Shown here: piece after piece, positions 1,105 to 35,743 of the stretch
How positions within the stretch are numbered: position 1 is the first letter of the stretch
How the letters are laid out: every line of letters starts with the position of its first letter
Source: Octopus sinensis
Taxonomy: Eukaryota
Direction of reading: 5' to 3'
DNA: 64,000 nucleotides
Assembly: GCF_006345805.1 (NCBI RefSeq)
Contig: NC_042997.1
Span: 194,928,001 to 194,992,000 of the forward strand
The notes under the pieces: model-generated
What the model saw: only the letters and a program-made list of their open reading frames with translations
What the model was told of the DNA's origin: nothing
Database searches by the model: none
Translations under genes and position numbers: made by a program

Positions 1105-1168
<64 letters not shown>
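1105..1168. repeat. (TA)n microsatellite
   Basis: Direct reading. Confidence 0.95.
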
Positions 1169-1170
<2 letters not shown>

Positions 1171-4549: not shown

Positions 4550-4594
<45 letters not shown>

Positions 4595-4606
4595 GTAACA
4601 GTAGTA

Positions 4607-4653
<47 letters not shown>

Positions 4654-6367: not shown

Positions 6368-6401
<34 letters not shown>

Positions 6402-15400: not shown

Positions 15401-18400
15401 AAGAAGAAATATAAGTACTGGGGAGTTGATCCATTAGACCAGGGATTCTCAAACCTTTCCGGGCTGCCGCCCCCTTGACACACAGGCCACATTCCTAGCA
15501 CCCCCACTCCAACTAACATCGACTCCTTTCTGAAACAAATTCAAAGCAACTGTATTTCACAAATAAAAATTAACCTAATGAACCCATTATTTTGTTGTTT
15601 TTACCTGAATCATTCCCCCATTATTGCCCACTTTTTACAAGAATTGCTACCCCATTATCCCCACACTTTTCTTCAATGCCCCCAGTGGAGCAATACTGCC
15701 CACTTTGGGAACCACAGCATTAGACTATGGCCAGCATGGCCATAGGCTAATGACTGAAACAAGTAAAAATTTTTTAAAATATGACTACAGTACTGATTAA
15801 AAGACTTTCTGGTCAACAAGCTCTGTGCCATAAGTCTTTAGAAGCAGAGTTGACAGTTCAATAACAAAGTCACAATGTATTTCTTTTATAATTCAGTCTG
15901 TTCTTATACATTAGTATATAACTTAATATCCATTTCCAGGTTGGTAACGAAAGGGTTAAAGACCCAAACCTTTGTCTTTCTGCACTGATATCAGCAGTGT
16001 CAGACACCCTTGTCCAATGAGGTCAGAATTACTGATTAACATTAAAACAATTTCCTATCAAAATAAGGATTGTAAATTTAAAGAATTATTTACTCTGTTT
16101 TCCATTTCCATACTTCTTCAAGAAATTTTTCTCTGCCAAGATCATGTTTTGTGCAGCCCTTCTTCTGCCATAACCATTTCTCAATGATCACTTGAGTTGC
16201 AATGCCAGCATGGTCCAGTCCTGGGAGCCAGAGTACCTGGTGTCCTTGCATTCGGTTCCTGTAATTTAGAACAGAGGAATAGCTTATTTGTTTTACAAAT
16301 AACAATGCAACTCTTTGGAAAAATCTCTCTATATATAAAGCTGAAGTTGTCTGTGTATGGCAGGTTTGGTAGTTTTCAACTAACACTATCTCCTCCAAGA
16401 CCCCGCAGCGCAAGTTGACCAAAATTGAGAGTATGATAGAAAAAAGCTTGCTCTTCCTTCGATAGAAGAAAAAATTCAAATCAGACCATGTTAACACCAA
16501 AAATTATTTACATCAAAAAGGTGCTTTTTTTCTATGAAAATCCCTATTTTTTTACTGCTGTGTCGCCATTTTTCAGGCATTTCAACCAGGAAAATGTTCA
16601 CTTAAAGAGAATAACAAGCTATATAATGCAAAATTTTTACTTTTCAAAAATTCCAATTCTAAAGGGTTGAAATAAACCCGAGCAATGCCGGGCGATGCTG
16701 CTAGTATTGTATAAATAAATACTTTTCCATTATTTAATTGTAAAGCTATATAAGTGACGCAATGCAGGACATTCTCAGACAACTAAATAAACCTTTTTAT
16801 TATAAGCATGTGGCCTGAAATTTTGGGGAAGGAATTAATTGGTTATATTGACCCTAGTGTGGAACTAGTACTTATTTTATTGAGCCTTTTTATTTAAAGG
16901 CTCAAGGCCTGAAATTTTGGGTGGATGGATTAGTCAAGTATCTTGATCCCAGTGTTTCACTGGTACTTAATTTATCGATCCCAAAAGGCTGAAAGGCAAA
17001 GCCAACCTTGGTGGAATTTGAACTCAGAACATAAGGACAGATGAAGTGCCACTAAGCATTTTGTTTGCCATGTTGATGATTCGGCCAGCTTACTACCTTC
17101 AGACAACTAAATAATAAAAATATAAAAGTGTTTTGTAATTTGTTAGATATATAGAGAGACAGAGAGAGGAATAGGGCATTGATAGGTAAATACATGGAGG
17201 AGCAGCCAGAGAGGGATAGGACTTTGACAGAGAATCAGACTAAGAGAGTGGGAGTTGAGAGAGAGAGTCAGACAGATTGGGGTATCGATAGCTAGACAAA
17301 TAGGTGGAGCATTGATAACTAGATACAGAGAAAGGCAGCTAGATAGGGCATTGGTAGCCAGATGTAAAGAGAAAGATAGATATATGAGAGTGTTGATAGT
17401 CAGACAGATAACTGGGAATTTGATAGCTACATACATAGAGAAATAGATATATGAGAGAGATAGATAGCTGGAGCATTAATAGGCAGATATATTGAGAAGA
17501 CATACAGAGAGAGATGGGATATTGATAGCCAGATACAGAGAGGTGAGCATTGATAGTCAGAGAGAGGGGTAGAGAGAAAGAGAGAGAGACAGAGATAGAG
17601 CATTTATATTAGATACATGGACAAAGGCAGGTCGAGCAATTGATAACCAGATAAATAGAAAAATAAATAGAGAACTTGGGTATTGATAGCCAGATAAAGA
17701 TATTGTACAGTGACTTACCAACGGACTATAGCATCTTGAATGGAGCATGTCAAAGCATGACCAAGATGGAGTGAACCAGTCACATTAGGGGGTGGCAAAC
17801 AGATGACAAACCTTCTCTTCTTTACAGCATCCTGCAACAGTTCAGAAGAGCAACATAAGATTACAAATTCTGGGTTATACAAAAAGGAGTGGAAAAAATA
17901 TTTTAAAAGAATGGTAGACACAGGCATGGCTTTTGGGGTTAAGAAGCTTGATTCCCAACCATGTGGTCTTGGATTCACCTCCATTGCATTGTACTTTGGG
18001 CAAATGTCTTCTTTGATATAGTAGAATAGACCTTTGCTGACTTGACTTGACTTGACAGCATTCACCCGGGGTGGGTTGAGCTGGCTTCATTCATCCTCAA
18101 TGCCGCATCTCTCACAAACGCTGACCAAAATCCTCACAGCCGGCTTTGCCCCACCAGACAAAACACCCATTGTCCTCAATGGTGATATTCTTGAAGAGGT
18201 TGAGAGTTTCAAATACCTTGGCGCCATCATTACAGCTACAGTTCAAGGTGAGGCTGACATTAAAACACGAATCGACCTCGCTTGCCAAGCCTTCAACCGA
18301 CTCAGTGCACGACTCTGGTCAAGATCTGAGATCCGACGTACCACCAAAGTACGGATCTACCAAGCACTAGTGCGAACGATTCACCTTTATGGCAGCAAGT

Positions 18401-19395
18401 CAAGGCCAATGAGGGTGGAAGATATTAAGCGACGAGAATCCTTCGATCACCTCTGTCTACGCCGCATCCTTCGTGTCCGATGGCATCACTTTGTCTCTAG
18501 ACCTTTGCTGAGCCAAACCAAAAGCAATGTGGTGAGTGTATTTGGTAAGTAGAAACTGAAAGAAGCCCATTGCATGTATGTGTGTGTGTATACTTTAAAT
18601 GAGGAAAGTTTTATGCAATGGATGCATATCCTATTATATATTATGCAAACCTGAAATGCATGTATTAAAAGTATTCAAAATATCACTATTTGGCTTCACT
18701 TCATTATTACAACTTGGGCCTCACTGAGGCGAGGTGGCTGAGTTCCTTTCATGTGTTGGGCTTCACGGAGGAAATGACTAAGACCTTTAGCATTATGTCG
18801 TGCTTGAGAGGAAGACGACATCAAGCCGAGTGAAATCGCAATTGTGGCGGATACTGGTGTAACGTAAATGGCACTTGTGCTGGTGGCATGTAAAAGCACC
18901 CATTACATTCTCAGAGTGGTTGGTGTTAGGAAGGGCATCCAGCTGTAGAAAACCATGCCAAATCAGACTGGAGCCTGGTGCAGCCTTCTAGCATGCCGGC
19001 CTAGTCAAACTGTCCAACTCATGCCAGCATGGACAGCGGATGTTAAATGAGGATGATGATGATATATATACATATACATTTATATATATATTTATATACA
19101 TTTATGTAATTGCCAGTGCTGCTGGACTGGCTCCTGTGCAGGTGGCACATAAAAGTACCATTTGAGTGTGGCTGTTGCCAGTACCGCGTGACTGGCCCTC
19201 GTGCTGGTGGCATGTAAAAGAACCCACTACATGCTTGGAGTGGTTGGCATTAGGAAGGGCATCCAGCTGTAGAAACTCTGCCAGATCAAGATTGGAGCCT
19301 GGTGCAGCCATCTGGTTCGCCAGACCCTAGTCAAATCGTCCAACCCATGCTAGCATGGAAAGTGGACAATGATGATGATGATAATATATATATGC

Positions 19396-19426
<31 letters not shown>

Positions 19427-21291
19427 CAGACACACACACACACACACATATATATATACACATACATATATACACACACACACACGTGTATGTGTGTGTG
19501 TTTATTTTGATATCATCTGGTAGTTGCAAAATGAGTGTCACTGTCGTACAAGCAATGCCATCCATTTCTGATCTTGTATGAAAACGATGTATGGCTTTGG
19601 GAAAAATTAACTTTCTTCAAAGAAGCTGAAGATGGGTGACAGGAAGAATGTAAGGACATCTGGTTGTAGAAAAATCCACCTAAATGAATTGTGTGTGACG
19701 CATGCAATCATGGGAAAGTGAATGTTAAAATGATGAAAATGACACACACTTAACTGGCTTCTATATGCTTTCAGTCTACTAAGTCTACTTGCAAAGCTTT
19801 GGTTGTCCCGAGGCTATCACAGAAAACACTTGCTCAAAGTGCTGTACAGTGGGCCTGAACCTGAAACCACATGGTTGTCAAACAAACTCTTTAACCACAC
19901 AGCCAAAGAAGCTGTGAATTAAGAAGGAAAAGCTAGAAACCTGAATCGGCTGTGGTTGGTGAAAACCTTTCTCTTCCCACCATTTGTACCATACGGCTTC
20001 AACGTATTCTGGGTTGTAGGCTGGAGGAAGGGTACCAGTAATTTCTACAAAAAAAAAAAAAAAAAAATCAGAGAATCACGACTTGCTAGAAATAGCAGCA
20101 AAATTTTCTCTACGTCACATCATTGCTTAAAGCTTAGTGGTCATTTGTGAATATAATTTGGTAGCATGTACTGTGCTTTTCTTAACTGTTTTAGGTGTTT
20201 ATGTAAAAGCACATAAAGGCACCATCCGAATGTGGCCGATGCCAGCGCTGTCTTGACTGGCTTCTGTGCCGGTGGCACATGACCTGCTGTGCTTGAGGAG
20301 GCCTATTGAGTCAAGTACATCAACATCAAAATAGAAATCAAATGGAAATAGTAGTCGTGATACCTGTGCCAGTGGCACATAAAAAGCACCCACTACACTC
20401 ATGGAGTGGTTGGTGTTAGGAAGGGCATCCAGCTGTAGAAACACTGCCAGATCAGACTGGAGCCTGGTGCAGCCTCCTGGCTTCCCAGACCCCGGTCGAA
20501 CCGTCCAAATGTGCTAGCATGGAAAACGGATGTTAAACGATGATGATGATGTAGTTATGAATCAGGCACAGATAGCTTCTTGGCCCAACGGCCCTCAACC
20601 CAGTAGAATATGGAAGATGTGATAGTTGGAGAGAGAGAGAGTTGCACTAACAACTAGGTTGGTGTACATTTACAGCTGAGTAGACTGGGATAATGTGAAA
20701 CGAAGTGCCTTGCTTGAGGACATAGTACACTGCTCCACCTAGAGACTGAACCCATGACATTTTGATCATGAGCCCTATATTCAACCGCTAGGCCATATGC
20801 TTTCATACAAAATCACATTGTACTGTCTTAAATAAAAGAAAGAAAACATTGGATGTAGTCCAAGGTACACTGTGTCTGAAAAAAAAGACAGGATGGTCAC
20901 AACTGGAATAACCTTGATGGCAGGTGTATCAGGTGCTAAACAACAACTCCTCCTTTCATAGAAAATATTCAACCACTGGTTCATTCTCATTCTCTATCAT
21001 CTCTTTAGTGAAGGCACATGGCTTAGTGGTTAGGGTGTTGGACTCATGATTGTAATATTGTAGTTTCGATTCCTGGACTGGGTGATGCATTGTGTTCTTG
21101 AGCAAAACACTTCATTTCACGTCGGGGTGGCTGTGTGGTAAGTAGCTTGCTTACGAACCACATGGTTCCAGGTTCAGTCCCACTGTGTGGCACCTTGGGC
21201 AAGTGCCTTCTACTATAGCCTTGGGCCGACCAAAGCCTTGTGAGTGGATTTGGTAGACAGAAACTGAAAGAAGCCTATCGTATATATGTAC

Positions 21292-21327
<36 letters not shown>

Positions 21328-23236
21328 CTACACTCATGGAGTGGTTGGCGTTAGGAAGGGCATCCAGCTGTAGAAACACTGCCAGATCAGACCGGAGCCT
21401 GGTGCAGTCCCTGGCTTCCCAGACCCCGGTCGAACCGTCCAACCTGTGCTAGCGCGGAAAACGGACGTTAAACGATGATATATATATATATATATAGTAC
21501 ATGTGTATGTGTATATGTTTGAGTGTCTGTGTTTGTTGTCCCAACATTGCTTGACAACTGATGGCAGTGTGTTTATGTCCCCGTAACTTAGCGGTTCGGC
21601 AAAACAGACTGATAGAATAAGTACTAGGCTTACAAAGAATAAGTCCTGGAGTCGATTTGCTTGACTAAAGGCAGTGCTCCAGCATGGCCACAGTCAAATG
21701 ACTGAAACAAGTAAAAGAGTAAAGAGTTGTTCCAGTCTACTCAGCTGGCAAAAATGTGTAATCCTGCAATGGAGTGGCATCCTGTCCAGGGAGGAATATT
21801 TACACCAGAAAAACCAGGAAACTGGCCTCATGATCCTTAAGGGGCAATGTGTACTTCAGTACCTGCCATTAGGCACCGGTATGGCTATGTGTGATTGAGA
21901 AGCTTGCTTCCCAATCATGTGGTTTTGGATTCAGTGCCCCTGCATGACGCTTAGGGCAAATGTCTTCTATTATAGCCCCGAGTTCATACCTATACTGGTG
22001 TCAGGTAAAAAGCACCCAGTGCATTCTGTAAAGTGTTTGGTGTTAGGAAGGGCATCCAGATGTAGAAACCAAGCCAAAACAGACAATTGGAACCTGCCAG
22101 CTCCTGTCAAACTGTCCAACTCATACCAGCATGGAAAAGCAGATGCTGAATGATGGTGATAATGAAACTGAAAGAAGCCTGTCGCATATAAATATATAAA
22201 TGTGTGTGTATGTGCTTGTGAGTGTCCTGGTCTTGAAATCATCATCGTCATAGTTTAACGTCCGCTTTCCATGCTAGCATGGGTTGGACGATTTGACTGA
22301 GGACTGGCGAACCAGATGGCTGCACCAGACTCCAATCTTGATCTGGCAGAGTTTCTACAGCTGGATGCCCTTCCTAATGCCAACCACTCAGAGAGTGTAG
22401 TGGGTGCTTTTACATGCCACTGGCATGAGGGCCAGTCAGGCGGTACTGGCAACAGCCACGGAAAAATCGGGGTGTTTTTTTTGTTTTTTTACGTGTCACC
22501 GGCACACCGGCACAAGTGGCAGAAATCATGTGATTATTGTACATGACTGTCACTGTCATACAAAAAAATATTTTTAATTTCTATTTTTCCATGAAAAACA
22601 TCCACGGCCATGAAGAAATGTTACTTTGCTTGGAATCAGGTGAGTGTTGGTGACAGGAAGAGCATCTGGTCATAGAAAATCTGCCTCAAAAAATTTTGTC
22701 TGGCTCATACAAGCATGGAAAAGTGGATGTGATGATGATGATGATGATGAATAACAGTGAAGAGTGTATCCGAGACATACAGAGAAATGAGAGAAAACGT
22801 CCATATTAAAATCATCAAACCATAAACAAACACATAAAAAAAATGAGTACCTTTTTTTTGCCATGGAACTAAGCCCCTTGGACAGTCATTTGAATCCGAG
22901 TCATCTGTGGCCTGAAATTAAAAACTTAACATTGTATAAATCATATCACATCCAAGATACAGACTCACTGGTGATCTGTGTCCTCTCACTATCTTTTCTA
23001 CCACTACTGCTTTTGCAGATGGCTCATATTTATATCAGAAATTTCTTTAATATTTGTAGAGGCATGGTTTGGGTGGTCAGAAGTAACACTTCATTTCACA
23101 GAGTGGCTGTGTGGTAAGTAGCTTGCTTACGAACCGCATGGTTCTGGGTTCAGTCCTTGGGCCTTCTACTATAGCCTCGGGCCGACCAAAGCCTTGTGAG
23201 TGGATTTGGTAGACAGAAACTGAAAGAAGCCCGTTG

Positions 23237-23267
<31 letters not shown>

Positions 23268-26200
23268 ATATATGTTTGTGTGTCTGTGTTTGTTGCCCCA
23301 ACATTGCTTGACAACAAGAATCAAGAGTAAAAAAACAGAAACTGTTAGACAGGTGTTTGCCTGAAATGGTATCCTAGAAACAGGAGTAGTATAACTATGC
23401 CTGTGAATTTCCTGATAATTACATGAGTTTGTTCTATGCAACCAGATGACCAATAAAAAATTTCCTTGTGGGTCAATGCCAGTGCCACCTGATTGGTTCC
23501 CTGTGCCAGTGGCACACAAAAAGCATCATTCGAACATGGTTGATGCCAGTGCCCTGGCCTGATTGGCACCCGTGCCAGTAACACATAAAAAGCACCATCC
23601 GAACGTGGTCAATGCCAGTGGTGCCTGACTGATTCCTGTGCTGGTGGCACATAAAAAGCACCCACTACACTCTCATTAGGGTTGACGAAAGCAATGTGGT
23701 GGACAACGAAAAGCCTGGCTGATGACAGTCAAGGCTGATCTGGAACCCAAGCTAGGTCCCCATATCTACGGCATTCGCCGCTGGAATAAGGAGTGGTTGG
23801 AGATCACGTGGTCGTTGGCCTCAAATTGCCAGGCCTGGTTGGCATTTGTGAGAGATGCAGCATTGAGGATGAATGAAGCCAGCTCAACCCACCCCGGGGT
23901 GAATGCTGTCTCAAGACAAGACAAGACTACACTCTCAGAGTGGTTGGCATTAGGAAGGGCATCCAGCTGTAGAAACCTTGCCAGATCAGATTGGAGCCTG
24001 GTGCAGCGTACTGGCTTGCCAGTCCTAAGTCAAGCCGTCCAACCCATGCCAGCATGGAAAGCGGACGTTAAACGACGATGATGATGATGATCCTAAGGTG
24101 TTTGAGAGAAGCAACGCAAAGGAAGCAGCCTAGATGCTGCATCCTGACAATACACCTGTTCACACATCACTTTTTATCTGTGATTTTTCTTTTGGGCATA
24201 ATATGAAATTACTCTTGTCTACGCCCCAGTCACTCTACTGTCTGAGAACTTTTAAAAAATTTTGTTTTCAAGATTGAAATTCACCCTGAAAGGTAATTGA
24301 TTCCACATGAGAAAAGAAGAAAAAATCGCAATAAGAACTGTGCTTCACCCCTGAAAACTTGTTCCAGAACTGGAAAAATCCTTGGGAGTGATGTATCAAA
24401 AGTGTGGAAGACAAGTATGATTAGAATGTAAACAAAGCGCAGGAGTGGCTGTGTGGTAAGTAGCTTGCTTCCCAACCACATGGTTCAGGGTTCAGTCCCA
24501 CTGCGTGGCACTTTGGGCAAGTGTCTTCTACTATAGCCTCGGGCCGACCAAAGCCTTGTCAGAGGATTTGGTAGACGGAAACTGAAAGAAGCCCACCGTA
24601 TATATATGTATGTGTGTGTGTTTTTGTCCCCCCAACATCGCTTGACAACCGATGCTGGTGTGTTTACGTCCCCGTAACTTAGCGGTTCGGCAAAAGAGAC
24701 CGGTAGAATAAGTACTAGGCTTACAAAGAATAAGTCCTGGTATAGATTAGCTCGACTAAAGGCGTTGCTCCAGCACGGCTTCAGTCAAATGACTGAAACA
24801 AGTAAAAGAGTAAAGCAATGAAGTTTGGAATTTCTAATTGCTTTTAAATTCTCCTGAAATTCGAACACAGTTCATCCATTGGAGTCATCTCCGTAAATGA
24901 GTTTTTACCGCAGTGCGTAAAACTGGAAGCATTTTTATGGTGAACAAAATGCAGAATTTTTCCGCCAAGCTTTGAATGTTATTCTAGAATCTATTAATAA
25001 CGATTGTGATCGTTAAAGATTGCCGGCGATTACGGCCTCACAACGATGCCACGAGTGTCAAGTTCCATGTAATATAAATGAACTCTAGACAAGCAATGTT
25101 CAAACATAATACCCTAGGTTAGTACTTCTAAAGGTTTAACACAACTAATAAAACAAATAGCTTTAAACAAACACAACAAATAAAACAAAAGCAGAATGAA
25201 ATTGTAAAGACTGGAATTAGATATCGTAACCAGGTTACAAAATTAACTTGTTAGAGGCATAATCAAAACATGTTTCTCAATAGTGAGAGACTTTAAAAAA
25301 AATATGGCAATAAATCCTCTCAATTTACAATGTGGCTTCTTACGCATGGTATTAAAGATCTTTCAAACATTCTATTAGCCCTTACATGAAGCCTACATGT
25401 ATGTCTTCTTTACATACATACGTTAGTACCTGTTTCTTTACTACCCACAAGGTGCTAAACACAGAGAGGACAAACAAGGACAGACAAACGGACTAAGTCG
25501 ATTATATCGACCCCAGTGCGTAACTGGTACTTATTTAATCGACCCTGAAAAGATGAAAGGCAAAGTCGACCTCGGCGGAATTTGAACTCAGAACGTAGCG
25601 GCAGACGTACATAGGTTAATACCCTTTCGTCAATGCCCTTCGCTTTTCTCTCTGCAATGACATTTATTCAAATGTCATTATTATTAATCTTTATTCTGTC
25701 GGAGTTTTAATACAGAAATGTAATCGATAAATGATGTAAACAACTGAAATGCGTAATAAACTAGTCGAAGGTTTTGAATGGTACCCTTTGCCGAGAGTGA
25801 AGTGTACTGAAAAGAAAACTGACCCCAATTTAAATAAAACACGATGAACAGGTTGGTTCTTGCAACCAAGATTAGATTAGCTGTATTGCATTCGATGGTA
25901 ATAATTCTGATTCATTTTGTCCTAGCATGTAACTTCAGATGAAGTAAAATGATGACATGCATAGCTTTACCAAAGACGTTAGCGATGTCAGTGCAATGAT
26001 AACAAACTCGACATTGAAAGCAAGAGACTGCGGTTCGATTTATTTGCGGAAATTTGTAATTTCACCGTACATGCAAGACATAGATAATGGGGGTTTTTTT
26101 GTAAATGTTTTCTGAACCCGAGAAAAAGAATATAAATGTCCTTGAACCGAACTGTCAAAACATCATATTTATGTATGTGTAATAAATTTATGTTAAATAA

Positions 26201-26556
26201 TATCGTCAAATGGCTGTAGCTAAAAACAGTCATGTCCAATAAAATATAAGGATGTATATAATATATTAATGTTTCAAATAGTTATTTACTTAGTAAACAG
26301 TCAAATATATACAAATAATATCTGTAATCCGATTGTAAACATTTACCTGTGAGAAAGACCTTAAATTCAAAGCATTCGAAACTTTAGCTTGACATGGTCG
26401 AGTCGCTCGGTTCTGTATGAGTTTGCGGCAATTCCTGATCGTTCGAGAATAACTGTGATAGCGATTGTTTGTAAGATTATTCAACGTCCGTCGGCAAGTG
26501 TTGAGTGTGAGGTGAGAATGGGACAACAGCATGGCATGTTGGATGGAGGCAGCCAT
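2724..26556 (-). CDS. VARS2: Valyl-tRNA synthetase, mitochondrial type; 13 exons (about 511 codons), 3' part continues left of the window
   Basis: Exons 26556-26347, 22911-22851, 20044-19941, 17831-17719, 16258-16094, 14253-14172, 13364-13245, 12120-12012, 10244-10065, 8672-8545, 6866-6763, 4535-4454, 2800-2724 join in frame with GT-AG ends. ValRS motifs present: [13 protein letters not shown] (HIGH), [43 protein letters not shown]. The N-terminus is Arg/Ser-rich, lacks acidic residues and has no GST-like domain, favouring the mitochondrial paralogue. Confidence 0.93.
3100..4136 (+). mobile_element. RTE-clade LINE 3' portion (ORF C-terminus plus 3' UTR); longest copy of the most abundant repeat in the window
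   Basis: Frameshifted peptide ..[58 protein letters not shown], then a modular UTR, GGCGTTAGGAAGGGCATCCAGCTGTAGAAAC and a (GAT)n tail. Roughly 30 shorter tails occur in both orientations (e.g. 5690-5895, 6370-6545, 6960-7420, 13630-14130, 28460-28960, 34900-35350, 39590-40000, 45250-45710, 47280-47880, 59610-59890). Confidence 0.85.
4454..4535 (-). CDS. VARS2: VARS2 exon 12
   Basis: [27 protein letters not shown]|gtgagt. Confidence 0.94.
4538..4670. repeat. (AAT)n microsatellite abutting the VARS2 exon 12 acceptor
   Basis: Direct reading. Confidence 0.95.
4700..5490 (+). mobile_element. Decayed R4/Dong-like (RLE-endonuclease) LINE fragment
   Basis: LHGQF..WL..G.L...[13 protein letters not shown], degenerate CCHC knuckle [30 protein letters not shown]....[23 protein letters not shown]; frameshifted. 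Confidence 0.8.
6763..6866 (-). CDS. VARS2: VARS2 exon 11
   Basis: [34 protein letters not shown](S)|gtaatt. Confidence 0.94.
7690..8001 (-). mobile_element. tRNA-derived SINE with 12-bp TSD, nested in another SINE; second copy at 31215-31515
   Basis: A box TGGCCTAGTGGTT and B box GGTTCGAATC on the minus strand; AGTTGCATACTG duplicated at 7678-7689 and 8002-8013. Confidence 0.85.
8545..8672 (-). CDS. VARS2: VARS2 exon 10
   Basis: [42 protein letters not shown]|gtgaga. Confidence 0.93.
9815..10058. repeat. Polypurine (GA/GGGA/GAAA) compound repeat
   Basis: About 240 bp, almost entirely purines on the plus strand. Confidence 0.95.
10065..10244 (-). CDS. VARS2: VARS2 exon 9 (editing/CP1 domain)
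   Basis: [59 protein letters not shown](G)|gttcat. Confidence 0.93.
10372..11507. mobile_element. piggyBac-like MITE carrying a ~0.9-kb internal insertion
   Basis: TTAA at 10368-10371 and 11508-11511; 13-bp TIR CCCTTTTGTTACC; ends match the 221-bp copy at 51099-51319 in the opposite orientation. Confidence 0.75.
12012..12120 (-). CDS. VARS2: VARS2 exon 8
   Basis: [36 protein letters not shown](D)|gtaagt. Confidence 0.93.
13245..13364 (-). CDS. VARS2: VARS2 exon 7
   Basis: [40 protein letters not shown]|gtaagt. Confidence 0.95.
14172..14253 (-). CDS. VARS2: VARS2 exon 6
   Basis: [27 protein letters not shown]|gtaaga. Confidence 0.95.
15440..15717. mobile_element. hAT (Charlie-like) MITE nested in a SINE
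   Basis: Perfect 8-bp TSD CATTAGAC (15432-15439, 15718-15725); imperfect TIR CAGGGATTCTCAAA / TTTGGGAACCACAG. Confidence 0.8.
16094..16258 (-). CDS. VARS2: VARS2 exon 5
   Basis: [54 protein letters not shown](E). Confidence 0.95.
16324..16704 (+). mobile_element. Non-autonomous Helitron
   Basis: A|TC start, subterminal hairpin CCCG-AGCAATGC-CGGG, CTAG|T end, no TSD. Confidence 0.8.
17140..17700. repeat. Degenerate GATA/GAGA compound repeat
   Basis: Recurrent GGGCATTGATAGCCAGATA-like units. Confidence 0.8.
17719..17831 (-). CDS. VARS2: VARS2 exon 4 (HIGH motif)
   Basis: [37 protein letters not shown](W)|gtaagt. Confidence 0.93.
18041..18497 (-). mobile_element. RTE LINE insertion with inverted 5' segment and 14-bp TSD
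   Basis: TSD TAGACCTTTGCTGA at 18027-18040 and 18498-18511. The 3' end and (AAGTC)n tail are on the minus strand (18041-18122); the RT C-terminal peptide ([32 protein letters not shown]) is on the plus strand (18122-18497). Confidence 0.85.
19941..20044 (-). CDS. VARS2: VARS2 exon 3
   Basis: poly-T acceptor; [34 protein letters not shown]. Confidence 0.92.
22851..22911 (-). CDS. VARS2: VARS2 exon 2
   Basis: ttttaatttcag|[20 protein letters not shown](E)|gtactc; phase 0 to 1, bridging exons 1 and 3; weak sequence similarity. Confidence 0.65.
23676..23925 (+). mobile_element. 5'-truncated copy of the same RTE family with 12-bp TSD, inserted in another RTE tail
   Basis: TSD ACTACACTCTCA at 23664-23675 and 23926-23937; 3' end GATGAATGAAGCCAGCTCAACCCACCCC..GAATGCTGTC plus (AAGAC)n matches 18041-18122. 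Confidence 0.85.
24437..24813 (+). mobile_element. Full-length tRNA-derived SINE (family A) with central (TA/TG)n; about 12 copies in the window
   Basis: GTGGCTGTGTGG A box, GGTTCAGTCCC B box, CORE-like CCTTGGGCAAG. Other copies near 1935-2320, 8795-9200, 32690-33095, 36075-36415, 37805-38205, 53545-53955 and 63810-64000. Confidence 0.85.
26347..26556 (-). CDS. VARS2: VARS2 exon 1 (predicted mitochondrial targeting peptide)
   Basis: [70 protein letters not shown] then CAG|GTAAAT donor, phase 0; no D/E residues. Confidence 0.75.
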
Positions 26557-26868
26557 CACAGTTTGACCGAACCTGCTTTCTAACATTGAAGAGTTACAGA
26601 AAGCCGGGAGTGTTTCTTAAGCAATTAAGCATCATGACCGGGTGATCAGCAATTAACTCAAATAATTAGCCTCCTATTACACAGAATAAAGTTTTATCTA
26701 ATTTATTTTTCTTTTCAAATCAAAGTTAACGTTCGATTATTTAGTTTATAATGTTTTTTTTTTTTGTTATGAACAATGATAAAGATGAATAAGTAATTAC
26801 TGAGAATTGTCCAGCGACAACGGACTTGCTTGTTTAGAAAAGAAACACACACTTCAAGTGGGAAAACG
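26557..26868. promoter_or_regulatory. Putative bidirectional promoter and 5' UTRs shared by VARS2 and GTF2H4
   Basis: Only 312 bp separate the two divergent ATGs; the interval is repeat-free. No specific motif identified. Confidence 0.7.
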
Positions 26869-26993
26869 ATGTCAGCAACGATAGAATCGGGCAAATTGGA
26901 ATGTAAGGATTTATACGGGTATCTTAGAACTTTGCCTGCAAATGTTCTCGATAAACTCTATAATCATCCGGCAACATGTCTTGCTGTATTCAG
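26869..26993 (+). CDS. GTF2H4: GTF2H4 exon 1
   Basis: [41 protein letters not shown](R)|gtgaat. Confidence 0.95.
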
Positions 26994-29900
26994 GTGAATA
27001 TCTCTGAAGATTTTGTTATTTTTACATGTCATAATAGTTTTTTTTTTTTCAAGTGCTTCGTTGTTTGACAACATCCAACGTGGTTCTTATGTAATTTACT
27101 ATGTTAAATAACGTTACCAGTAATTTTCTAATATGTAGTCATCACCTAGCTCATAATGATCGCCTGGTTTATTCCTTGTGTACCTAACATGAAATTTAAA
27201 AGATTATTGTTATTATAATATCTCTCTTTTTGATTCTTGATTTGAAGTATTTTTTCGTTTACATGTGTCAGATCAGATGTCTGAAAAAAAATACTCATCT
27301 TAATGTGAAAAACGTTCCTAAATTTAGAGAAAATTTAGGGTAAAGGTAAACAGTTGCAGAAAGAAAAATTTACATATATGCGTAAATATAATTGTTCTTG
27401 TAAAAGAATAATCACAGTAGAATAACAATTTAAGGCGAAGTACTCAATGCATTGAGAAAGTGGATATATTTATTAAAATAATGGCTCTTATCAAACTGAA
27501 AATTCTGAGACTTAGTGTTGAAGGATTCATTATTTTAATTGAAAAAGTATTTGTATGTGTGAGTTTATCTGTCTGTCTTATATATATGTATGTATATGTA
27601 CATATAGATATATATATATAAATTAAATTAGAGATAAATATATATATATAATTTTCTGAAGTCCCAATTAACTTAATTTTCACAGTTTCACAGTAGATTT
27701 AACCTTGCTCAGTCTATCCATGCCATCAGTAAATGTTCCACTATTATTCTTAAAATAATAACATAATTTCAACACACACACACACACATGTGTGTGTGTT
27801 AATTATCTGTATTTATGCCCACCTTGTATTCAGAATTCTGAAGAACTGTACATCTTTGGCAAAATTTCTACACCTGGATGCCCTTTTTAACGCCAACCAC
27901 TCCAAGAGTATAGTGGGTGCTTTTTATGTGCCACTGGCAGGGAGCCAGTCAGACAGCACTGACGTCGGTTACATTTGAATGGTGCTTTTTACATGTCACC
28001 GTATATATATATATAAACTGCACACACTCTCAAAGCTTTGGTCAGCCTGGGGACTGAACCCAAGACCACATTGTTGAAAAGTAAGTTTCTCAACCACACA
28101 CCCACACTCATATATATATATGTATGTATTCCTCATTTTTACATCTGCTTTTCTTACTGGCATGAGTTGGCTGGGTCATCACAGTCGAAGTCATATTTTC
28201 CTTATTCGTGAATTTAATTTGTTTTCTTTCAATTAGGGAATTACCAGAACTTGCCAAACACTGTGTAATGAGAATCCTTTTTGTGGAACAACCCGTACCT
28301 CAGGCTGTTGTAGCACATTGGGTGGCCAACAAACATCATGAGTAAGTATTTTGATTGTTTTTTAAACAACTTTCAGTTTCAAGTATAATGACTCTAGAGT
28401 AATGTGTTAGACTACTGAGTTCAACATTATGAGTTCAAATTGCTTTGAGCATTATCATCATCATTGTTTAACGTCTGCCTTCCATGCTAGCATGGGTTGG
28501 ACGATTTGACTGAGGTCTGGCAAACCAGATGGCTGGACCAGACTCCAATATGATCTGGCAGAGTTTCTACAGCTGGATGCCCTTCCTAATGCCAACCACT
28601 CCGAGAGTGTAGTGGATGCTTTTACAGGCCACCGGCACGAGGGCCATTTAGGCGGTACTGGCAACGGCCACACTCAAATGGTGCTTTTTATGTGCCACCT
28701 GCACAGGAGCCAGTCTATGGTACTCTTAGCGCTCCACTAGCACGGATGCCAGTCATCGAATTTGATTTCGATTTCAATTTCACTTGCCTTGACAAGTCTT
28801 TGCAAGCAGAGTTTAGTGTCCAATGAAAGAAAGGCACACATAAGTGGACTGGTTACACCCTTGCCGCAGGCCACAACGTTTCTTTCTCACTTGCGCTTGC
28901 TGAGTCTTCTCAAGCACAGCATATTTCCAGAGGTCCCGGTCACTATAATAACGAAATTATTGTGTGCAGTGCTCAGGTGCACTACAGCTTATCAAAGGTG
29001 CAGGTATAGTACATAGAATTAGGAAAATCAACAGTGTATGAGTCATGATATACATGTGTGCATGTGTATGGAGGAGAGGGGATATCAGGTGTAGTGTTGG
29101 TGAATTTCAGGAAGCATTGAGGTTTTAAAGGATGCAGTGTCTCGGCGACTAACAACTGATGCAGGTAGTTTGTTCCATGCTTCAGCAACTCTGAGTGGGA
29201 AAAATGTTTCCGAAAGTCACGGGAGCTGTGCTGTTTTCTGACTTTGTAGGCATGCCCACATGTATTAGACACATGGAGCTCAAAAAGGTGGTTGTTGGTG
29301 CAATGGTTAATAATTTTGTGAGTGTTTACCAAGTCAAACGCCAGATGTTGGAGCTTCAATGTATCTATGCCCAGGGAAGTAAGGTGTTCAGAGTATAGTA
29401 GATGCCTGATGGAGGGTATTCACTTGGTTGTAAATCGCTGAACAGTTTCCAGGAGGTCAGTGTCCTGAGCAATATAGGGGTTCCAGACTGGTGAAGCAAA
29501 TTCCAAGTGTTGGAAACCTTCTGATAAACACACATACACAGTCTCCTTCAAAGATACACACCTCCACTTAAAGACACATTCTCTCTGTGTCTCTCTCTCT
29601 TTCCTTTTCTCTGTTGAAAATAGATATATTCCCTCAAAAATACACACATACTGTCACTCCATCGGTTACAACAACAAGGGTTCCAATTGATCTGATCAAT
29701 GGAAGGGCCTACTTATGAAATTAATATGCAATAAATTTGCCTCTCAGTGATGTATTTACATTAAGTATGACACACAGATGACTCCATATATGGTATGGTA
29801 TGTCTGGAGTACCAGATCTGTGAACTGTACTGAGTTCTTTGACTACCTATATGTCTTAGGTTTGCTTGATCAGGGTTGATTTGAGGTTATGCTGCAACAA

Positions 29901-32888
29901 CAGTAATGTTTAAATGAGCCAACCAGGGGACTTCTGTTTGGTTGCTTCATCTGCTACAAATAACAAGCAAATCTCTCTCATATCACTCTTTGCTGTATTA
30001 AAAAAAAGGAAGGAAAACATTAAATTACATAGTTCTTAAATGCATTGTCTTAAAAAATGAATAACAACAGGTAAGTCACATTTGGAATACTTTTGATCAT
30101 GTTTCCTTTTGATCAGAGCCGACCAAGGATCAAACAACATCAATGTTTGAAAGCTTTAATTTTTTAGAATTGTTCTTGTCCACCAGTTGTAATCATGAGT
30201 ATTCTTTCTTTTACTCAACCAGAGAACAGAAACAGGCAATGGCTGCTGTGACAGATCTGAGAGTTTGGCACGAACAACCTCTTCCAGGTGGGATGATGGG
30301 GTTCATATTGAACCAGACATTCCGAATGAACATGAAGACAGCTCTGTTAGGAGGGTAAGTGTCTAGAATGATTAAGACAATGATAACATTGTTTTAGCAT
30401 CCACTTTTGTCAAGCTTGCATAGGTTAGATGGAATTCATTGAGGCAGATTTTCTATCACTGGATGCCCTTCTTATTTCCAAACAACATAATATTTCCCTT
30501 TGATGAGACCATTTTCACGAAAAATTGGCAACTGTTAATATGACAATGACACTTCTTTACAAATATGCAATGTCAAGACCAGGAGGCACAGACACACACA
30601 CACACACCCCTCTCTCTTTTTCGGAGAGGCACAAACACCTACTAGCACCGTGTGTGTATATGTGTGACATATACACACACAGCTGTAACTTCTGCCTACC
30701 AAATTCAATCACAAAGCTTCGGTCAGCCTGGGGCTATAGCAGAAGACATTTGCCCAAAGTGCCACGCAGTGGGACTGAACCCGAAACCACATAGCTAGGA
30801 ATCAAGCTCCCTAACCACACAGCCATACCCGCGCCTACATTTATACACACATTAATATATAAATACAATGGGCTTCTTTCATTTTCTATCTACTAAATCC
30901 ACTCACAAGGCTGTGGTCGGCCTAGGGTTTTAGTAAACACCTACCTGAGGTTCCACACAGTGGAACTGATACTGAAATCATGTGATTGGGAAGTGAATTT
31001 CATAGCCACTCAAGGGCAGTGAACTTATATATATATCATCATCATCATCTAACATCCATTGTCGATGCTGGCATGGGTTGGATGGTTTGACTAGGGCTGG
31101 TAAATTGGAAGGCTACACTAGACACCAGTCTGATTTGCCATGGTTTTCTACAGCTGGATGCCCTTCCTAACACCAACCACTCTGAGAGTGTAACGGATGC
31201 TTTTATATATATATGTTTGTTCCTTCTCGTGCCATACCTGGCTCATAAGGGCCAGTTTCCTGGTTTCCTTGGCGTCTAGGTTTCCCACCTGGACGGGATG
31301 CCAGTCCATTGCAGGTGAGCTGCAAGATGCAGGAGGAAAGAGTGAGAGAAAGTTGTGGCAAAAGAGTCAGCAGAAGTTCGCCATTACCTTCTGCTGGAGC
31401 TGCGTGGAGCTTAGGTGTTTTGCTCATAAACACACGCATCACCCGGTCTGAGATTCGAACCTGCGATCCCTTGACTACGAGTCTGCTGCTCTAACCACTA
31501 GGTCATGTGCTTCCACACACACATATATATATATATATTTATACACACAGACATACTTCATGAAATGAAGTAGCTTACTCAAGGATACATGTACAAACAT
31601 AACTTTATATGTCGTATTTTATTGTACATTTTAGTGGTCAACCATGGACAGGTGGAGGTTCCCTTCCACCAGATAAGCATGCCAAAGATATTGCTTTTTT
31701 GGACAACTACGCTCAAGACAGATGGGAAGTAAGTAGTATTGCTTTTAATATTATTATTATTAAACAGAAATCCAAGGCAGTGAGTTGGGAGAATTGTTAG
31801 CACACTGGGCGAAATGCTTAGCGGTATATATTCTGCCTCTACGTTCTGAGTTTATATTCCGCCGAGGTTGACTTTGCCTTTCATCCTTTCAGGGTTGATA
31901 AATTAAGTACCAGTGAAACGCTGGGATCAAAATACTTGACTAATCCATTCACCCAAAATTTCAGGCCTTGAGCCTTTAGTAGAAAGGATTATTAGACACA
32001 AATCTAACATAGTTAAAGGTGGCGTGGTGGCAGAAACGTTAGCATGCCGGGCGAAATGCTTAATGGTATTTTGTCCGTCTTTATGTTTTGAGTTCAAATT
32101 CCGCCGAGGTCGACATTGCCTTTCATCCTTTCAGGGTCGATTAAATAAGTACCAGTTACGCACTGGGGTCGATATAATCGACTTAATCCGTTTGTCTGTC
32201 TTTGTTTGTCCTCTCTGCGTTTAGCCTCTTGTGGGTAGTAAAGAAATAGGTATTTTGTCCGTCTTTATGTTTTGAGTTCAAATTCCGCCGAGGTTGACAT
32301 TGCCTTTCATCCTTTCAGGGTTGATAAATTAAGTACCAGTTACGCATTGGGGTTGATGTAATCCTTGTTTGTCCCCTCATGTATAGCCCCTTGTGGGCAA
32401 TAAAGCAATAAGAAATCTAACATAGTTGTTAGGATGCAGGATAAAATGCTTAGTGGCATTTCTTCTGGCTCAACATGGACTTTTAAATTCTGATTCAAAT
32501 GCTATCAAGGAACTTTTGAATTACTCTGTATATTAATGTATCTTTTGAATTTTGATTTTGCAGTGTGTTCTTCATTTTATGGTTGGTTCATCCGACTGTG
32601 TCAGCAGAGATATAAAGTGGGTCTTACTACACGCAGGGCTCATGAAGGCGTAAGTCTTTCTGTATTTTCATTCCTCAGTTGTTTCTTTTTGTCTACTCTT
32701 TTACTCTTTTCAGTCATTTGACTGTGGCCATGCTGGAGCACTGCCTTTAGTCGAGCAAATCGACCCTAGGACTTATTCTTTGTAAGCCTAGTACTTATTC
32801 TATCGGTCTCTTTTGCCGAACTGCTAAGTTACGGGGACGTAAACACACCAACATCGGTTGTCAAGCGATGCTGGGGAAACAAATACAA

Positions 32889-32921
<33 letters not shown>

Positions 32922-35695
32922 CATATACATATATACGACAGGCTTCTTTCAGTTTCCGTCTGCCAAATCCACTCACAAGGCTTTGGTCGGCCCGAGGCTA
33001 TAGTGGAAGACACTTGCCCAAGGTGCCCCGCAGTGGGACTGAACCCAGAACAGTGTGGCTGGTAAGCAAGCTACTTACCACACAGCCACTCCTGCACCAC
33101 TCCTGTGTCTGTCGCTTTCTTACAAATTCCAGCTCTAAAAGACGATACAGATGTAACTGGAAGAGGAAGAGAAGTGCTAAATGGGCTGAGGGTTCAAATT
33201 TTATTGCAGCTAGTGTGTTATGCTTATTGTTCTGCCTTTTTTTTTCTGTTTCTTCCTTTGGAATAAAAGGCTATCAATGACTTCTCTCCACTGTTTTCAG
33301 CTCTGGGTTGGTTTTTTTTTTCTGTTTCTCTTCTGCTTTTTCAGCTCTACCTCAGTATCCTGCTTCCAGCTATTGTTAGAGTGTCCTCTCATCTATATCC
33401 CTTGTGAGATGTTTCCCTTAAGGAAGACTTCCCCTCTTGAGTCTTGTGCCTTTTCAATTGCCATTGGATGCTTGTGTAACTTTGCTGTTTTCTAGGTAGG
33501 AGTGTTGGCCCTATGCAAACCCATTTTTATCCCTGGGAAAAAGTGGTCAAGAGTAGTCTGACCTCTATCTTTTGACCTGTCCAGTATGGGAGACCCTACC
33601 AGAAGCTTGCACTCTACTGACATAGGTCCAGGTCATAAAAGACACATAAGCCGCTAAAACAAGGGCTGGTCTTGTGGTGACCGTTCCTACCTTGATTTGC
33701 AAGAAATGTTTGTGGTACAGTTAAAATTGGATAATTTTTGTTGCATTGGACAAAAGCACTTTCCAGTATTTATACCCAAGCTGGTGCCATATAAAAAGCA
33801 TCGGTGCTGGTGCCACGTAAAAAGCACCCAGTACACTCTTTCAAGTGGTTGACATTAGGAAGGGCATCCAGCCATAGAAACCTTGCCTTATGTCGATAGC
33901 CAGCTGGAGGAGGTGTCCTCTTGGGGCTACAAGCCACAGTAGCATCCACCCTTAAGGGTTAGCCACATTTAAGTGGCAAATATACTTCACGATGTCATGC
34001 AGCTACTTTTTATACCTTGCTCAGAGATTTATTATTGTTTGTATTTTACTATTATTTATTATATTCACTAATATAAAACTAGACATTAGTTCTCTTTCAC
34101 ATGTACAATGTACTTTATTTCAGTGAGTCAGAAGATCAAGCCCCAGTGATTACACCAAATGGTTTCCAATTCCTACTGATGGACACATCGTCTCAAGTCT
34201 GGTTCTTCATGTTACAATACCTCAATACACTAGCAGTGAGTTAACATTATAACTGAGCTTTAATTCTTACTCTTCATTGCATTCTGTATCTTAACTAAGT
34301 TTTCTATCTTTGTTTCTCCTAAATCTATTCTGTAGTTAGCTTAATACACTTCAGCCTCACACAATGTCCAGTTTAACAACACCATTTTTCCTTTGGTCAT
34401 CTATAATGGAATTCACACTGTTGCAAGAATTTTAACAGACTCTCAGTTCTCACTCAGTCCCTGTTTCGCTTGCAGATAGTCATACTGGGCATTATTAACC
34501 ATATTACTCTCACTGGTCTTAGGTTCTGCTTCTCTTTTTGACTAACTTTTTAAAGAAAATGTTTTTAAATATAGTCTGTTAGAACTTTACATTATCCAGT
34601 TTGTGCCATTTTTTTGGGAATCATTTCTATAAAACTTATTATTCCTGTTAATATACATCTTGCTATAAAATGTTCACCCATCAAAACTATTATCATTACA
34701 ATCTTGATATATAATACATATAAATGGAACTGGCTCTTGAAACATATATCTCAAACCAATATTTACATGCATTTATATGCTTTGAGAACCAGTTCCAAAA
34801 AAGAATTATTTTATGTTCTTTTGAACATAAATCCTTAAGACATCAACAATATATATATATATATATATATCATCATCATCATCATCACCTTCCCTTCTTG
34901 GGACACAAAACTCTACTTGTGAAGACGTGATGAGGCAAGTGAGGATCAGAATCGAAATCGATCAATGGAAATCGATCAATGGAAATTGCAGATGTGTTAC
35001 CAGTGCCGGTGGCATGTAGAGAACTTTCCGTTTCGCGACCGTTGCCAGCACCGCCCCGTTTCGTGTCCGTTGCCAGCCTCGCCTGGCCCTCGTGCCGGTG
35101 GCACATAAAAAGCACCATCCGTTCGTGGCCGTTTGCCAGCTCTGTCTGGCACCAGTGCGGGTGGCACGTAAAAAGCACCCACTACACTCACGGAGTGGTT
35201 GGCGTTAGGAAGGGCATCCAGCCGTAGAAACACTGCCAGATTTGACTGGGCCTGATGAAGCCTTCTGGCTTCACAGACCCCAGTAGAACCGTCCAACCCA
35301 TGCTAGCATGGAAAACGGACGCTAAACGATGATGATGATGATGATGATGATATATATATATATATATATAATAAAAATCAAATGGAAATTGTAGTTAAGA
35401 TACCAGTGCTGGTGGCACATAAAAACACCTTCCGAACGTGGCCAATGCCAGCGCCACCTGACTGGCGTTCGTGTTGGTGACACGTAAAAAGCATCAACTG
35501 ATCGTGGCCATTTGGCAGCCTCCTCAGGTCCATGTGCCGGTGGCATGTAAAAAGCACCCACTATACTTGCGGAGTGGTTGGCGTTAGGAAGGGCATCCAG
35601 CTGTAGAAACACTGCCAAATCAGACTGGAGCCTGGTGCAGCCTCCTGGCTTCCCAAACCCTAGCATGGAAAACGAACATTAAACGATAATGATGA

Positions 35696-35743
<48 letters not shown>

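What the first reader, a model, noticed from the sequence alone, without database searches (positions are those of the whole stretch)
26347..26993. VARS2 and GTF2H4 head-to-head (312 bp between ATGs): the same pair is adjacent in the human MHC
Seen: the mitochondrial ValRS ATG (26556, minus) and the TFIIH p52 ATG (26869, plus) diverge from a short repeat-free interval in an otherwise repeat-saturated window. Established: human GTF2H4 and VARS2 are immediate same-strand neighbours at 6p21.3 in the MHC region. Inference: one inversion of GTF2H4 converts this head-to-head layout into the human tandem layout. The pair may therefore be an ancestral bilaterian microsynteny block retained in a lineage known for heavy genome rearrangement. 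A shared promoter would also couple a mitochondrial translation enzyme to a transcription/NER factor.
Basis: partly seen in the sequence, partly recalled or inferred. Interest (0 to 1): 0.72.

Follow-up and report, generated by a model that had tools for sequence, protein, structure and literature searches.

The report
Conserved divergent VARS2–GTF2H4 gene pair
In this octopus sequence the genes for the mitochondrial-type valyl-tRNA synthetase and the TFIIH p52 subunit start back-to-back only 312 bases apart. The same tight layout is found in another octopus, an argonaut, an oyster and a brachiopod, so it is an old but ordinary example of two housekeeping genes that probably share one promoter region.

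Summary
GTF2H4 (TFIIH p52) is complete on the + strand: 14 exons, ATG at 26869, 455 aa, 99% identical to O. bimaculoides GTF2H4. A valyl-tRNA synthetase gene runs the other way from an ATG at 26556, with 12 exons before it leaves the window. Exactly 312 bp separate the two ATGs.

The interval lies in the longest repeat-free stretch of the window (25608-27546). It also lies in a roughly 2.7-kb zone where CpG is not depleted (o/e about 1.1, against 0.45 window-wide).

The synthetase has an acid-free, arginine-rich 70-aa first exon. In NJ trees it groups with vertebrate VARS2 and Drosophila mitochondrial ValRS, with 92-93% bootstrap on full-length sites but only about 48% on window-encoded sites.

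The same head-to-head pair, with 218-312 bp between start codons, occurs in O. bimaculoides, Argonauta, Crassostrea and Lingula. Neither immediate neighbour is a ValRS in Patella, Owenia, amphioxus, sea urchin, a tick or gar. Ptychodera and a skate show nothing within 9-10 kb and are not informative.

The pair therefore dates at least to the mollusc-brachiopod ancestor. Bilaterian ancestry, linked to the human tandem pair, is plausible but not shown. A shared promoter is inferred, not demonstrated. This is a new member of a known kind (conserved divergent gene pairs) and of modest interest.

The parts
26347..26556 (-). ValRS (VARS2-type) exon 1. It encodes 70 aa ([10 protein letters not shown]...RSFSQ) with a presequence-like composition: 0 Asp/Glu, 9 Arg, 2 Lys. 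Donor CAG|gtaaat follows 26347.
   Evidence: The exon is 91.9% identical to O. bimaculoides with no indels. Annotated ValRS genes start here in O. bimaculoides and Argonauta.
26584..26586 (-). Alternative in-frame upstream ATG ([14 protein letters not shown]...). The O. bimaculoides annotation uses it, but it is not conserved in Argonauta.
26557..26868 (.). 312-bp spacer between the two start codons, the putative bidirectional promoter plus both 5' UTRs. It is AT-rich (GC 0.32) with CpG o/e 0.98.
   Evidence: Spacer lengths in relatives are 302, 218, 249 and 225 bp.
26577..26596 (.). Run of bases invariant between Octopus and Argonauta, 21-40 nt upstream of the ValRS ATG. It is probably ValRS 5' UTR or core promoter.
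26630..26654 (.). Second block conserved across octopods (CAYCATGRCCGGKTRAYCAGCAA), 74-98 nt upstream of the ValRS ATG.
26772..26812 (.). Best local match between the Octopus and Argonauta spacers, 57-97 nt upstream of the p52 ATG.
   Evidence: score 21, against shuffles of 10.7 +/- 1.6 with a maximum of 18.
26869..26993 (+). GTF2H4 (TFIIH p52) exon 1, encoding [10 protein letters not shown]...CLAVF(R). Donor CAG|gtgaat.
   Evidence: It is 96.8% identical to O. bimaculoides.
26869..49505 (+). Complete GTF2H4 coding region, 14 exons: 26869-26993, 28237-28341, 30223-30354, 31635-31728, 32564-32649, 34124-34235, 35984-36052, 38322-38405, 40096-40228, 41798-41849, 42809-42887, 43663-43710, 46935-47075, 49398-49505. 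The product is 455 aa.
   Evidence: (99% identical to O. bimaculoides GTF2H4, P0177).
4454..26556 (-). 5' part of the ValRS gene, 12 exons: 26556-26347, 22911-22851, 20044-19941, 17831-17719 (HIGH motif), 16258-16094, 14253-14172, 13364-13245, 12120-12012, 10244-10065, 8672-8545, 6866-6763, 4535-4454. These encode 486 aa, and the gene continues beyond the left end of the window.
24600..27300 (.). Zone where CpG is not depleted (500-bp o/e 0.8-1.5), against a window-wide value of 0.45 and a median of 0.39. This is consistent with an unmethylated promoter region.
25608..27546 (.). Longest stretch of the window with no within-window repeat match.

Best explanation
This is a divergently transcribed pair of housekeeping genes, a mitochondrial-type valyl-tRNA synthetase (VARS2 orthologue) and TFIIH subunit p52 (GTF2H4). 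Their first coding exons face away from a roughly 0.3-kb spacer that is free of repeats and not depleted of CpG. The most likely mechanism is that this spacer is one nucleosome-free promoter region with two closely spaced or overlapping core promoters firing in opposite directions. Any breakpoint or insertion in it would damage at least one essential gene. That would explain why the pair has stayed together, in the same orientation and with the same spacing of about 220-310 bp, since at least the common ancestor of molluscs and brachiopods, even in the heavily rearranged and repeat-laden octopus genome. Shown here: the gene identities, exon structure, spacing, repeat and CpG profile, and conservation of the layout in four lophotrochozoan lineages. 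Inferred: TSS positions inside the spacer, sharing of regulatory elements, co-expression, mitochondrial import, and homology with the human tandem GTF2H4-VARS2 adjacency.
For: The same ValRS(-)/p52(+) layout occurs in O. bimaculoides (272 bp from the annotated ATG, 302 from MAAS), Argonauta hians (218), Crassostrea angulata (249) and Lingula anatina (225). The downstream neighbour of p52 differs in each phylum: GDPD/CBM20 in octopods, Mutator/RNase_T in oyster, EF-hand mitochondrial carrier in Lingula. Only this pair is retained. The interval is the longest repeat-free stretch of the window and lies in its largest CpG-undepleted zone. Promoter-proximal blocks are conserved between Octopus and Argonauta above shuffle controls, whereas the flanking introns share only repeats. 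For the mitochondrial type, exon 1 has 0 acidic and 11 basic residues in 70, and there is no GST or Lys-rich cytosolic extension. NJ bootstrap for (Octopus + oyster + Lingula) with vertebrate VARS2 and insect ValRS-m, excluding VARS1-like sequences, is 92-93% on 945 sites.
Against: No transcript, CAGE or chromatin data were available, so the TSSs could lie elsewhere, for example in upstream non-coding exons. Between the two Octopus species the spacer is no better conserved (89.5%) than the adjacent introns (87.5-89.1%). No motif is shared with the oyster or Lingula spacers, and none of the classic vertebrate bidirectional-promoter motifs is present. The pair is missing next to p52 in limpet, Owenia, amphioxus, sea urchin, tick and gar, so it is dispensable in many lineages. 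On the 372 sites that the window itself encodes, VARS2 grouping reaches only about 48% bootstrap (against 10-12% for VARS1). By raw identity the fragment is as close to VARS1-like sequences as to mammalian VARS2.
Confidence: 0.7

Rival explanations
1. The pair is kept passively. The two genes have independent, merely abutting promoters. They stay together only because a spacer of about 300 bp between two essential genes is a tiny target for viable breakpoints. There is no regulatory coupling between mitochondrial translation and TFIIH.
For: There is no excess conservation of the spacer between Octopus species. No motifs are shared across phyla. The pair has been lost in many lineages without obvious consequence. 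The two gene products have no known functional link.
Against: Orientation and spacing are identical (218-312 bp) in genomes of very different size and repeat load. Promoter-proximal blocks are conserved across Octopoda. Conserved 5'-5' pairs with spacers under 1 kb are enriched for bidirectional promoters and co-expression in general (PMC3514665).
Confidence: 0.25
2. The lophotrochozoan head-to-head pair and the human tandem GTF2H4-VARS2 adjacency arose independently. The pair would then be a lophotrochozoan feature, not a bilaterian one.
For: Every non-mammalian deuterostome tested either lacks the pair or was uninformative. Amphioxus, sea urchin and gar have other immediate neighbours. Ptychodera and the skate show nothing within 9-10 kb. 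A tick also lacks it. The orientation differs between human and lophotrochozoans.
Against: Chance immediate adjacency of the same two genes in two lineages is very improbable: about 1e-4 genome-wide, and a few per thousand even if both sit on one ancestral linkage group. GTF2H4 lies upstream of VARS2 in both layouts, so a single-gene inversion suffices. Zebrafish keeps both genes on chromosome 19.
Confidence: 0.3
3. The synthetase is not a dedicated mitochondrial enzyme. It would be either the VARS1 orthologue or a single dual-targeted ValRS that uses the two in-frame ATGs (26586 and 26556) or downstream starts, as yeast VAS1 does.
For: Raw identity to VARS1-like sequences is 53-58%, against 54% to marmot VARS2. 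Tree support is weak on window-encoded sites. Two in-frame ATGs are present. Whether octopus has a second ValRS gene could not be checked.
Against: The full-length trees give 0% bootstrap for grouping with VARS1-like sequences and 92-93% for grouping with VARS2/ValRS-m. There is no GST or Lys-rich appended domain. The annotated product sizes (1068, 1056, 1083 and 1055 aa) are close to mammalian VARS2, at 1064 aa for the marmot protein. The upstream ATG is absent in Argonauta.
Confidence: 0.1

Closest known systems
Conserved ancestral microsyntenic pairs (CAMPs) of the co-regulated 5'-5' class (Irimia et al. 2012, PMC3514665). The type example is HSPD1-HSPE1, which share a bidirectional promoter.
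   Same: Two unrelated housekeeping genes lie in divergent orientation with a spacer well under 1 kb. Orientation is conserved across phyla while the surrounding gene order is scrambled.
   Different: HSPD1-HSPE1 is kept head-to-head from fungi to human and has an experimentally shown shared promoter. Here the head-to-head form is shown only in molluscs and a brachiopod. It is absent from several other phyla, it is tandem in human, and promoter sharing is untested. The two products have no functional relationship, unlike the chaperonin pair.
Human GTF2H4-VARS2 neighbours in the MHC class I region (6p21.3)
   Same: The same two orthologous genes are immediate neighbours, with GTF2H4 on the upstream side of VARS2. 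The gene order DDR1-GTF2H4-VARS2L is given in PMC1309616.
   Different: The human pair is tail-to-head on one strand (orientation from memory, not tested here), so the VARS2 promoter abuts the GTF2H4 3' end rather than its 5' end. No bidirectional promoter is possible there.
[quoted passage not shown] 2004; both cited from memory)
   Same: Divergent housekeeping, DNA-repair or mitochondrial genes lie less than 1 kb apart in a CpG-undepleted zone without repeats.
   Different: The octopus spacer is AT-rich (GC 0.32), not GC-rich. It lacks GABP/ETS, NRF1, YY1, SP1 and ZNF143 consensus sites.

Membership tests
TFIIH subunit p52 / Tfb2 (GTF2H4) | A Tfb2 domain followed by the Tfb2_C (p8-binding) domain, with full-length similarity to solved p52. 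| tested here: met
   PF03849 matches residues 18-368 (E 1e-139) and PF18307 matches 383-450 (E 7e-27). Human p52 chains match at E 2e-193 over residues 9-455. The model is 99% identical to O. bimaculoides GTF2H4.
Class Ia valyl-tRNA synthetase | A Rossmann catalytic core with the HIGH motif and a CP1 editing insertion, with the best match to ValRS rather than IleRS or LeuRS. | tested here: met
   [14 protein letters not shown] lies in exon 17831-17719. tRNA-synt_1 matches at E 2e-68 and the editing-domain model also hits. T. thermophilus ValRS matches at 5e-100, against IleRS at 1e-33.
Class Ia valyl-tRNA synthetase | A KMSKS motif and an anticodon-binding domain. | not testable with these tools
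   The gene leaves the window after residue 486. The orthologous annotated products in O. bimaculoides, Argonauta, oyster and Lingula do carry PF08264 Anticodon_1.
VARS2 (mitochondrial ValRS) as opposed to VARS1 | An N-terminal mitochondrial presequence, and no GST-like or Lys-rich cytosolic extension. | tested here: met
   The first 70 aa contain 0 Asp/Glu, 9 Arg and 2 Lys and are rich in Ser/Thr/Leu. The catalytic core starts at about residue 91. No targeting predictor was available, so this rests on composition only.
VARS2 (mitochondrial ValRS) as opposed to VARS1 | Phylogenetic grouping with named mitochondrial ValRS of other animals. | tested here: inconclusive
   NJ trees group Octopus, oyster and Lingula with Marmota and Callorhinchus VARS2 and Drosophila ValRS-m, excluding VARS1-like sequences. 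Support is 92-93% on 945 sites but about 48% on the 372 window-encoded sites. No maximum-likelihood method was available.
VARS2 (mitochondrial ValRS) as opposed to VARS1 | Import into mitochondria and charging of mitochondrial tRNA-Val. | not testable with these tools
   This needs experiments.
Bidirectional-promoter gene pair | Divergent orientation with less than 1 kb between the 5' ends. | tested here: met
   312 bp separate the start codons, and 282 bp if the upstream ATG is used. The TSSs must lie closer together than that or overlap, unless upstream non-coding exons exist.
Bidirectional-promoter gene pair | TSSs mapped inside the spacer, with shared elements or co-expression. | not testable with these tools
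   No RNA-seq, CAGE or ATAC data were reachable.
Conserved ancestral microsyntenic pair (CAMP) | Adjacency of the orthologous pair in distantly related phyla. | tested here: met
   The pair is present in Cephalopoda (3 species counting the window), Bivalvia and Brachiopoda. ValRS coding sequence in the flanks was confirmed by tblastn.
Conserved ancestral microsyntenic pair (CAMP) | Presence on both sides of the protostome-deuterostome split, which would indicate bilaterian age. | tested here: inconclusive
   The deuterostome evidence comes from mammals only: the gene order from the literature and the orientation from memory. Amphioxus, sea urchin and gar are negative. Ptychodera and the skate are uninformative within 9-10 kb.

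The most novel reading that the evidence does not exclude
VARS2-GTF2H4 is a pan-bilaterian (possibly older) divergent gene pair whose common promoter co-regulates mitochondrial translation capacity with TFIIH. It was retained intact in molluscs and brachiopods, converted to a tandem pair by a single-gene inversion on the vertebrate or tetrapod stem, and lost repeatedly elsewhere.
Probability: 0.35. Interest if true: 0.45.

Novelty: new member of a known kind. Interest (0 to 1): 0.33.

Why it matters
The pair adds one well-documented case to the class of ancient, tightly spaced divergent gene pairs. It shows that such a pair survives in the octopus genome, which has lost much ancestral microsynteny and is nearly half repeats. 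It also gives a compact, roughly 300-bp candidate for a cephalopod housekeeping bidirectional promoter, which could be useful as a small dual-expression element. Finally, it offers a marker linking a lophotrochozoan locus to the human MHC class I framework region, a small data point for reconstructing the proto-MHC linkage group. It does not open a new kind of biology.

Tried and rejected
1. Short-exon queries to the protein search returned only fragments of similar length and cost two of the three searches.

I used the near-identical O. bimaculoides protein instead.

3. Direct splicing of ValRS exon 1 to the exon at 20044 was rejected because the phases do not match. A bridging 61-nt exon was then found through conservation with Argonauta.

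4. I looked for motifs shared by the spacers of octopods, oyster and Lingula, and for ETS, NRF1, YY1, SP1, CCAAT, CRE, E-box, TATA and ZNF143 consensus sites in the octopus spacer. Nothing meaningful turned up.

5. I tested whether the spacer is more conserved than the introns between the two Octopus species. It is not.

6. Literature searches for an earlier description of this pair as microsynteny found none in the main texts or the supplements that are held. The supplement of Irimia 2012, which might list it, is not held.

7. Rfam and tRNA scans of the window gave no hits.

8. The skate look-up was uninformative. The contig ends 9 kb downstream of a 32-kb gene.

9. Raw similarity as a VARS1/VARS2 classifier was rejected, because mammalian VARS2 is fast-evolving and identity values overlap.
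Full report
**What is in the sequence.** The window is eukaryotic and aligns at about 90% nucleotide identity, collinearly, with an Octopus bimaculoides chromosome. It therefore comes from a close Octopus relative. I then modelled them from splice sites and reading-frame continuity.

**GTF2H4.** The gene is complete on the + strand. It has 14 exons, an ATG at 26869 and a stop at 49505, and encodes 455 aa.
- It is 99% identical to the O. bimaculoides protein named GTF2H4.
- It carries Pfam Tfb2 and Tfb2_C.
- It matches human p52 in solved TFIIH structures at E 2e-193.

**The synthetase.** A valyl-tRNA synthetase gene runs on the - strand from an ATG at 26556, through 12 exons (486 aa), and leaves the left end of the window.
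- It has the HIGH motif [14 protein letters not shown].
- It carries Pfam tRNA-synt_1.
- Its best solved relative is T. thermophilus ValRS at 5e-100, far above IleRS or LeuRS.

They are exact. 26347 is the last base of ValRS exon 1 (donor CAG|gtaaat). 26993 is the last base of p52 exon 1 (donor CAG|gtgaat). 26557-26868 is 312 bp.

**Is exon 1 really the first exon of the synthetase?** Its phase is incompatible with direct splicing to the exon at 20044, which was a warning sign. A tblastx comparison with the Argonauta locus revealed a conserved 61-nt exon at 22911-22851, encoding ...GLVPWQKK, with good acceptor and donor sites. This exon restores the frame.

Independent annotations of O. bimaculoides and Argonauta hians also start their ValRS gene at the homologous position. 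Between the two Octopus species exon 1 has no indels in 210 columns, whereas the spacer and introns have 14-50 gaps.

O. bimaculoides is annotated from an in-frame ATG ten codons upstream, which corresponds to window position 26586. That ATG is absent in Argonauta. The Argonauta, Lingula and oyster proteins begin MAAS/MSAS, as at 26556.

**VARS2 or VARS1?** Three lines of evidence bear on this.
- The 70 residues of exon 1 contain no Asp or Glu, 9 Arg and 2 Lys. They are followed almost at once by the catalytic core, so there is no GST-like or Lys-rich appended domain.
- Raw similarity does not discriminate.
- In NJ trees the octopus fragment groups with the p52-adjacent genes of oyster (Saccostrea) and Lingula. 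This set joins proteins named mitochondrial ValRS in Marmota, Callorhinchus and Drosophila, plus insect relatives and two choanoflagellates. The VARS1-like sequences fall outside.

Bootstrap support for this grouping is 92-93% on 945 full-length sites. On the 372 sites encoded in the window it is about 48%, against 10-12% for the VARS1 alternative. I regard the VARS2 assignment as probable. The method is crude and the VARS1 side is poorly labelled.

**The interval itself.**
- Within-window repeats cover 44% of the window. The longest repeat-free stretch, 25608-27546, contains the finding.
- CpG o/e is 0.8-1.5 from about 24.6 to 27.3 kb, against 0.45 for the whole window and a median of 0.39 for 500-bp windows. 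In a genome with gene-body and repeat methylation this would be expected of an unmethylated promoter. That reading is an inference.
- The spacer is AT-rich (GC 0.32) and has none of the consensus sites typical of vertebrate bidirectional promoters.
- Between the two Octopus species it is no more conserved than the flanking introns: 89.5% against 87.5-89.1%.
- Between Octopus and Argonauta the introns share only repeats, but three promoter-proximal blocks persist at 26577-26596, 26630-26654 and 26772-26812. The best local score is 21, against shuffles of 10.7 +/- 1.6 with a maximum of 18.

**Synteny.** I looked up GTF2H4 orthologues and read their annotated neighbours within 10 kb.

| Species | Layout | Spacing between start codons |
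|---|---|---|
| O. bimaculoides | ValRS(-)/p52(+) head-to-head | 272 bp from the annotated ATG, 302 from MAAS |
| Argonauta hians | head-to-head | 218 bp |
| Crassostrea angulata | head-to-head | 249 bp |
| Lingula anatina | head-to-head | 225 bp |

tblastn confirmed ValRS exons in exactly these four loci and in none of the others. The gene on the other side of p52 differs in each phylum, so only this pair has been retained.

In six species the immediate neighbours of p52 are other genes:
- Patella, in two assemblies
- Owenia
- Branchiostoma
- Strongylocentrotus
- Lepisosteus
- the tick Ornithodoros

Ptychodera and the skate Leucoraja have no called gene and no ValRS similarity within 9-10 kb. 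Given their large intergenic distances, this is uninformative.

Presence in both Mollusca and Brachiopoda places the head-to-head pair at least in their common ancestor.

**The human comparison.** A published gene table lists DDR1, GTF2H4 and VARS2L consecutively in the human class I region and puts both zebrafish orthologues on chromosome 19 (PMC1309616). The same-strand orientation in human is from my memory and was not tested.

GTF2H4 lies on the 5' side of VARS2 in both layouts, so flipping GTF2H4 alone interconverts them. Independent immediate adjacency of the same two genes would be very unlikely by chance, which favours common descent. However, no non-mammalian deuterostome, ecdysozoan or cnidarian with the pair was found, so bilaterian age remains a hypothesis.

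**Mechanism.** The best reading is a bidirectional promoter region shared by two essential housekeeping genes. The tiny, functionally dense spacer leaves no room for viable breakpoints or transposon insertions, which would explain persistence in a rearranged, repeat-rich genome.

The main rival is passive retention of two independent back-to-back promoters. The lack of excess spacer conservation between Octopus species and the repeated losses elsewhere are compatible with either view. Only TSS mapping, expression correlation and reporter dissection can decide.

**Comparison with what is known.** Irimia et al. 2012 (PMC3514665) describe hundreds of conserved ancestral microsyntenic pairs. These are enriched for 5'-5' orientation and spacers under 1 kb, with HSPD1-HSPE1 as the type case. 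This pair fits that class.

I found no paper that names GTF2H4-VARS2 as such a pair. The relevant supplementary lists were either not held or use orthogroup identifiers, so prior listing cannot be excluded.

**Verdict.** This is a real, accurately described feature and a new member of a known kind. It is less secure in another, since bilaterian ancestry and promoter sharing are untested. Interest is modest.

Noticed in passing
window 26584-26586 (-): There is an in-frame ATG ten codons upstream of the conserved MAAS start. It is present in both Octopus species, is used by the O. bimaculoides annotation, and is absent in Argonauta. It could give a slightly longer presequence or act as an upstream start.
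   Followed up: partly
window, e.g. 23722-24081, 28461-28673, ~13976, ~19186, ~36951, ~40528; also L002 6396-6553: A SINE-like interspersed repeat recurs in the introns of both genes. Its translation reads ...[24 protein letters not shown]... / [12 protein letters not shown].... Argonauta has it as well.
   Followed up: no
window ~56000-64000 (-), exon 62301-62450: This is the 3' part of a third gene, tail-to-tail with GTF2H4. In O. bimaculoides and Argonauta it is annotated as a 613-aa CBM_20 + GDPD protein (GPCPD1-like). This neighbour is conserved only within octopods.
   Followed up: partly
window 52376-53538: This region gives many staggered matches to one O. bimaculoides segment (L001 31495-32406), which points to an internal tandem or satellite-like array downstream of GTF2H4.
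   Followed up: no
window 1-1200: The left end shows strong GC skew (0.52 in the first kb), high CpG o/e (up to 1.86) at low GC, and CA/TA-type microsatellites. It lies inside a ValRS intron.
   Followed up: no
window 10600-11300: A second small CpG-undepleted, repeat-free patch (o/e about 1.1) lies inside a ValRS intron. Its meaning is unknown.
   Followed up: no
related proteins P0322, P0350 (choanoflagellates) in the trees: Two choanoflagellate ValRS sequences fall inside or next to the animal mitochondrial-type clade rather than with the VARS1-like sequences. This hints that the VARS1/VARS2 split predates animals, but the NJ support is weak.
   Followed up: partly
literature, PMC1309616: Both human ValRS genes lie in the MHC. 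The cytosolic one (then called VARS2, now VARS1) is in class III, and the mitochondrial one (then VARS2L) is next to GTF2H4 in class I. The two paralogues may have stayed on one linkage group since their duplication.
   Followed up: no
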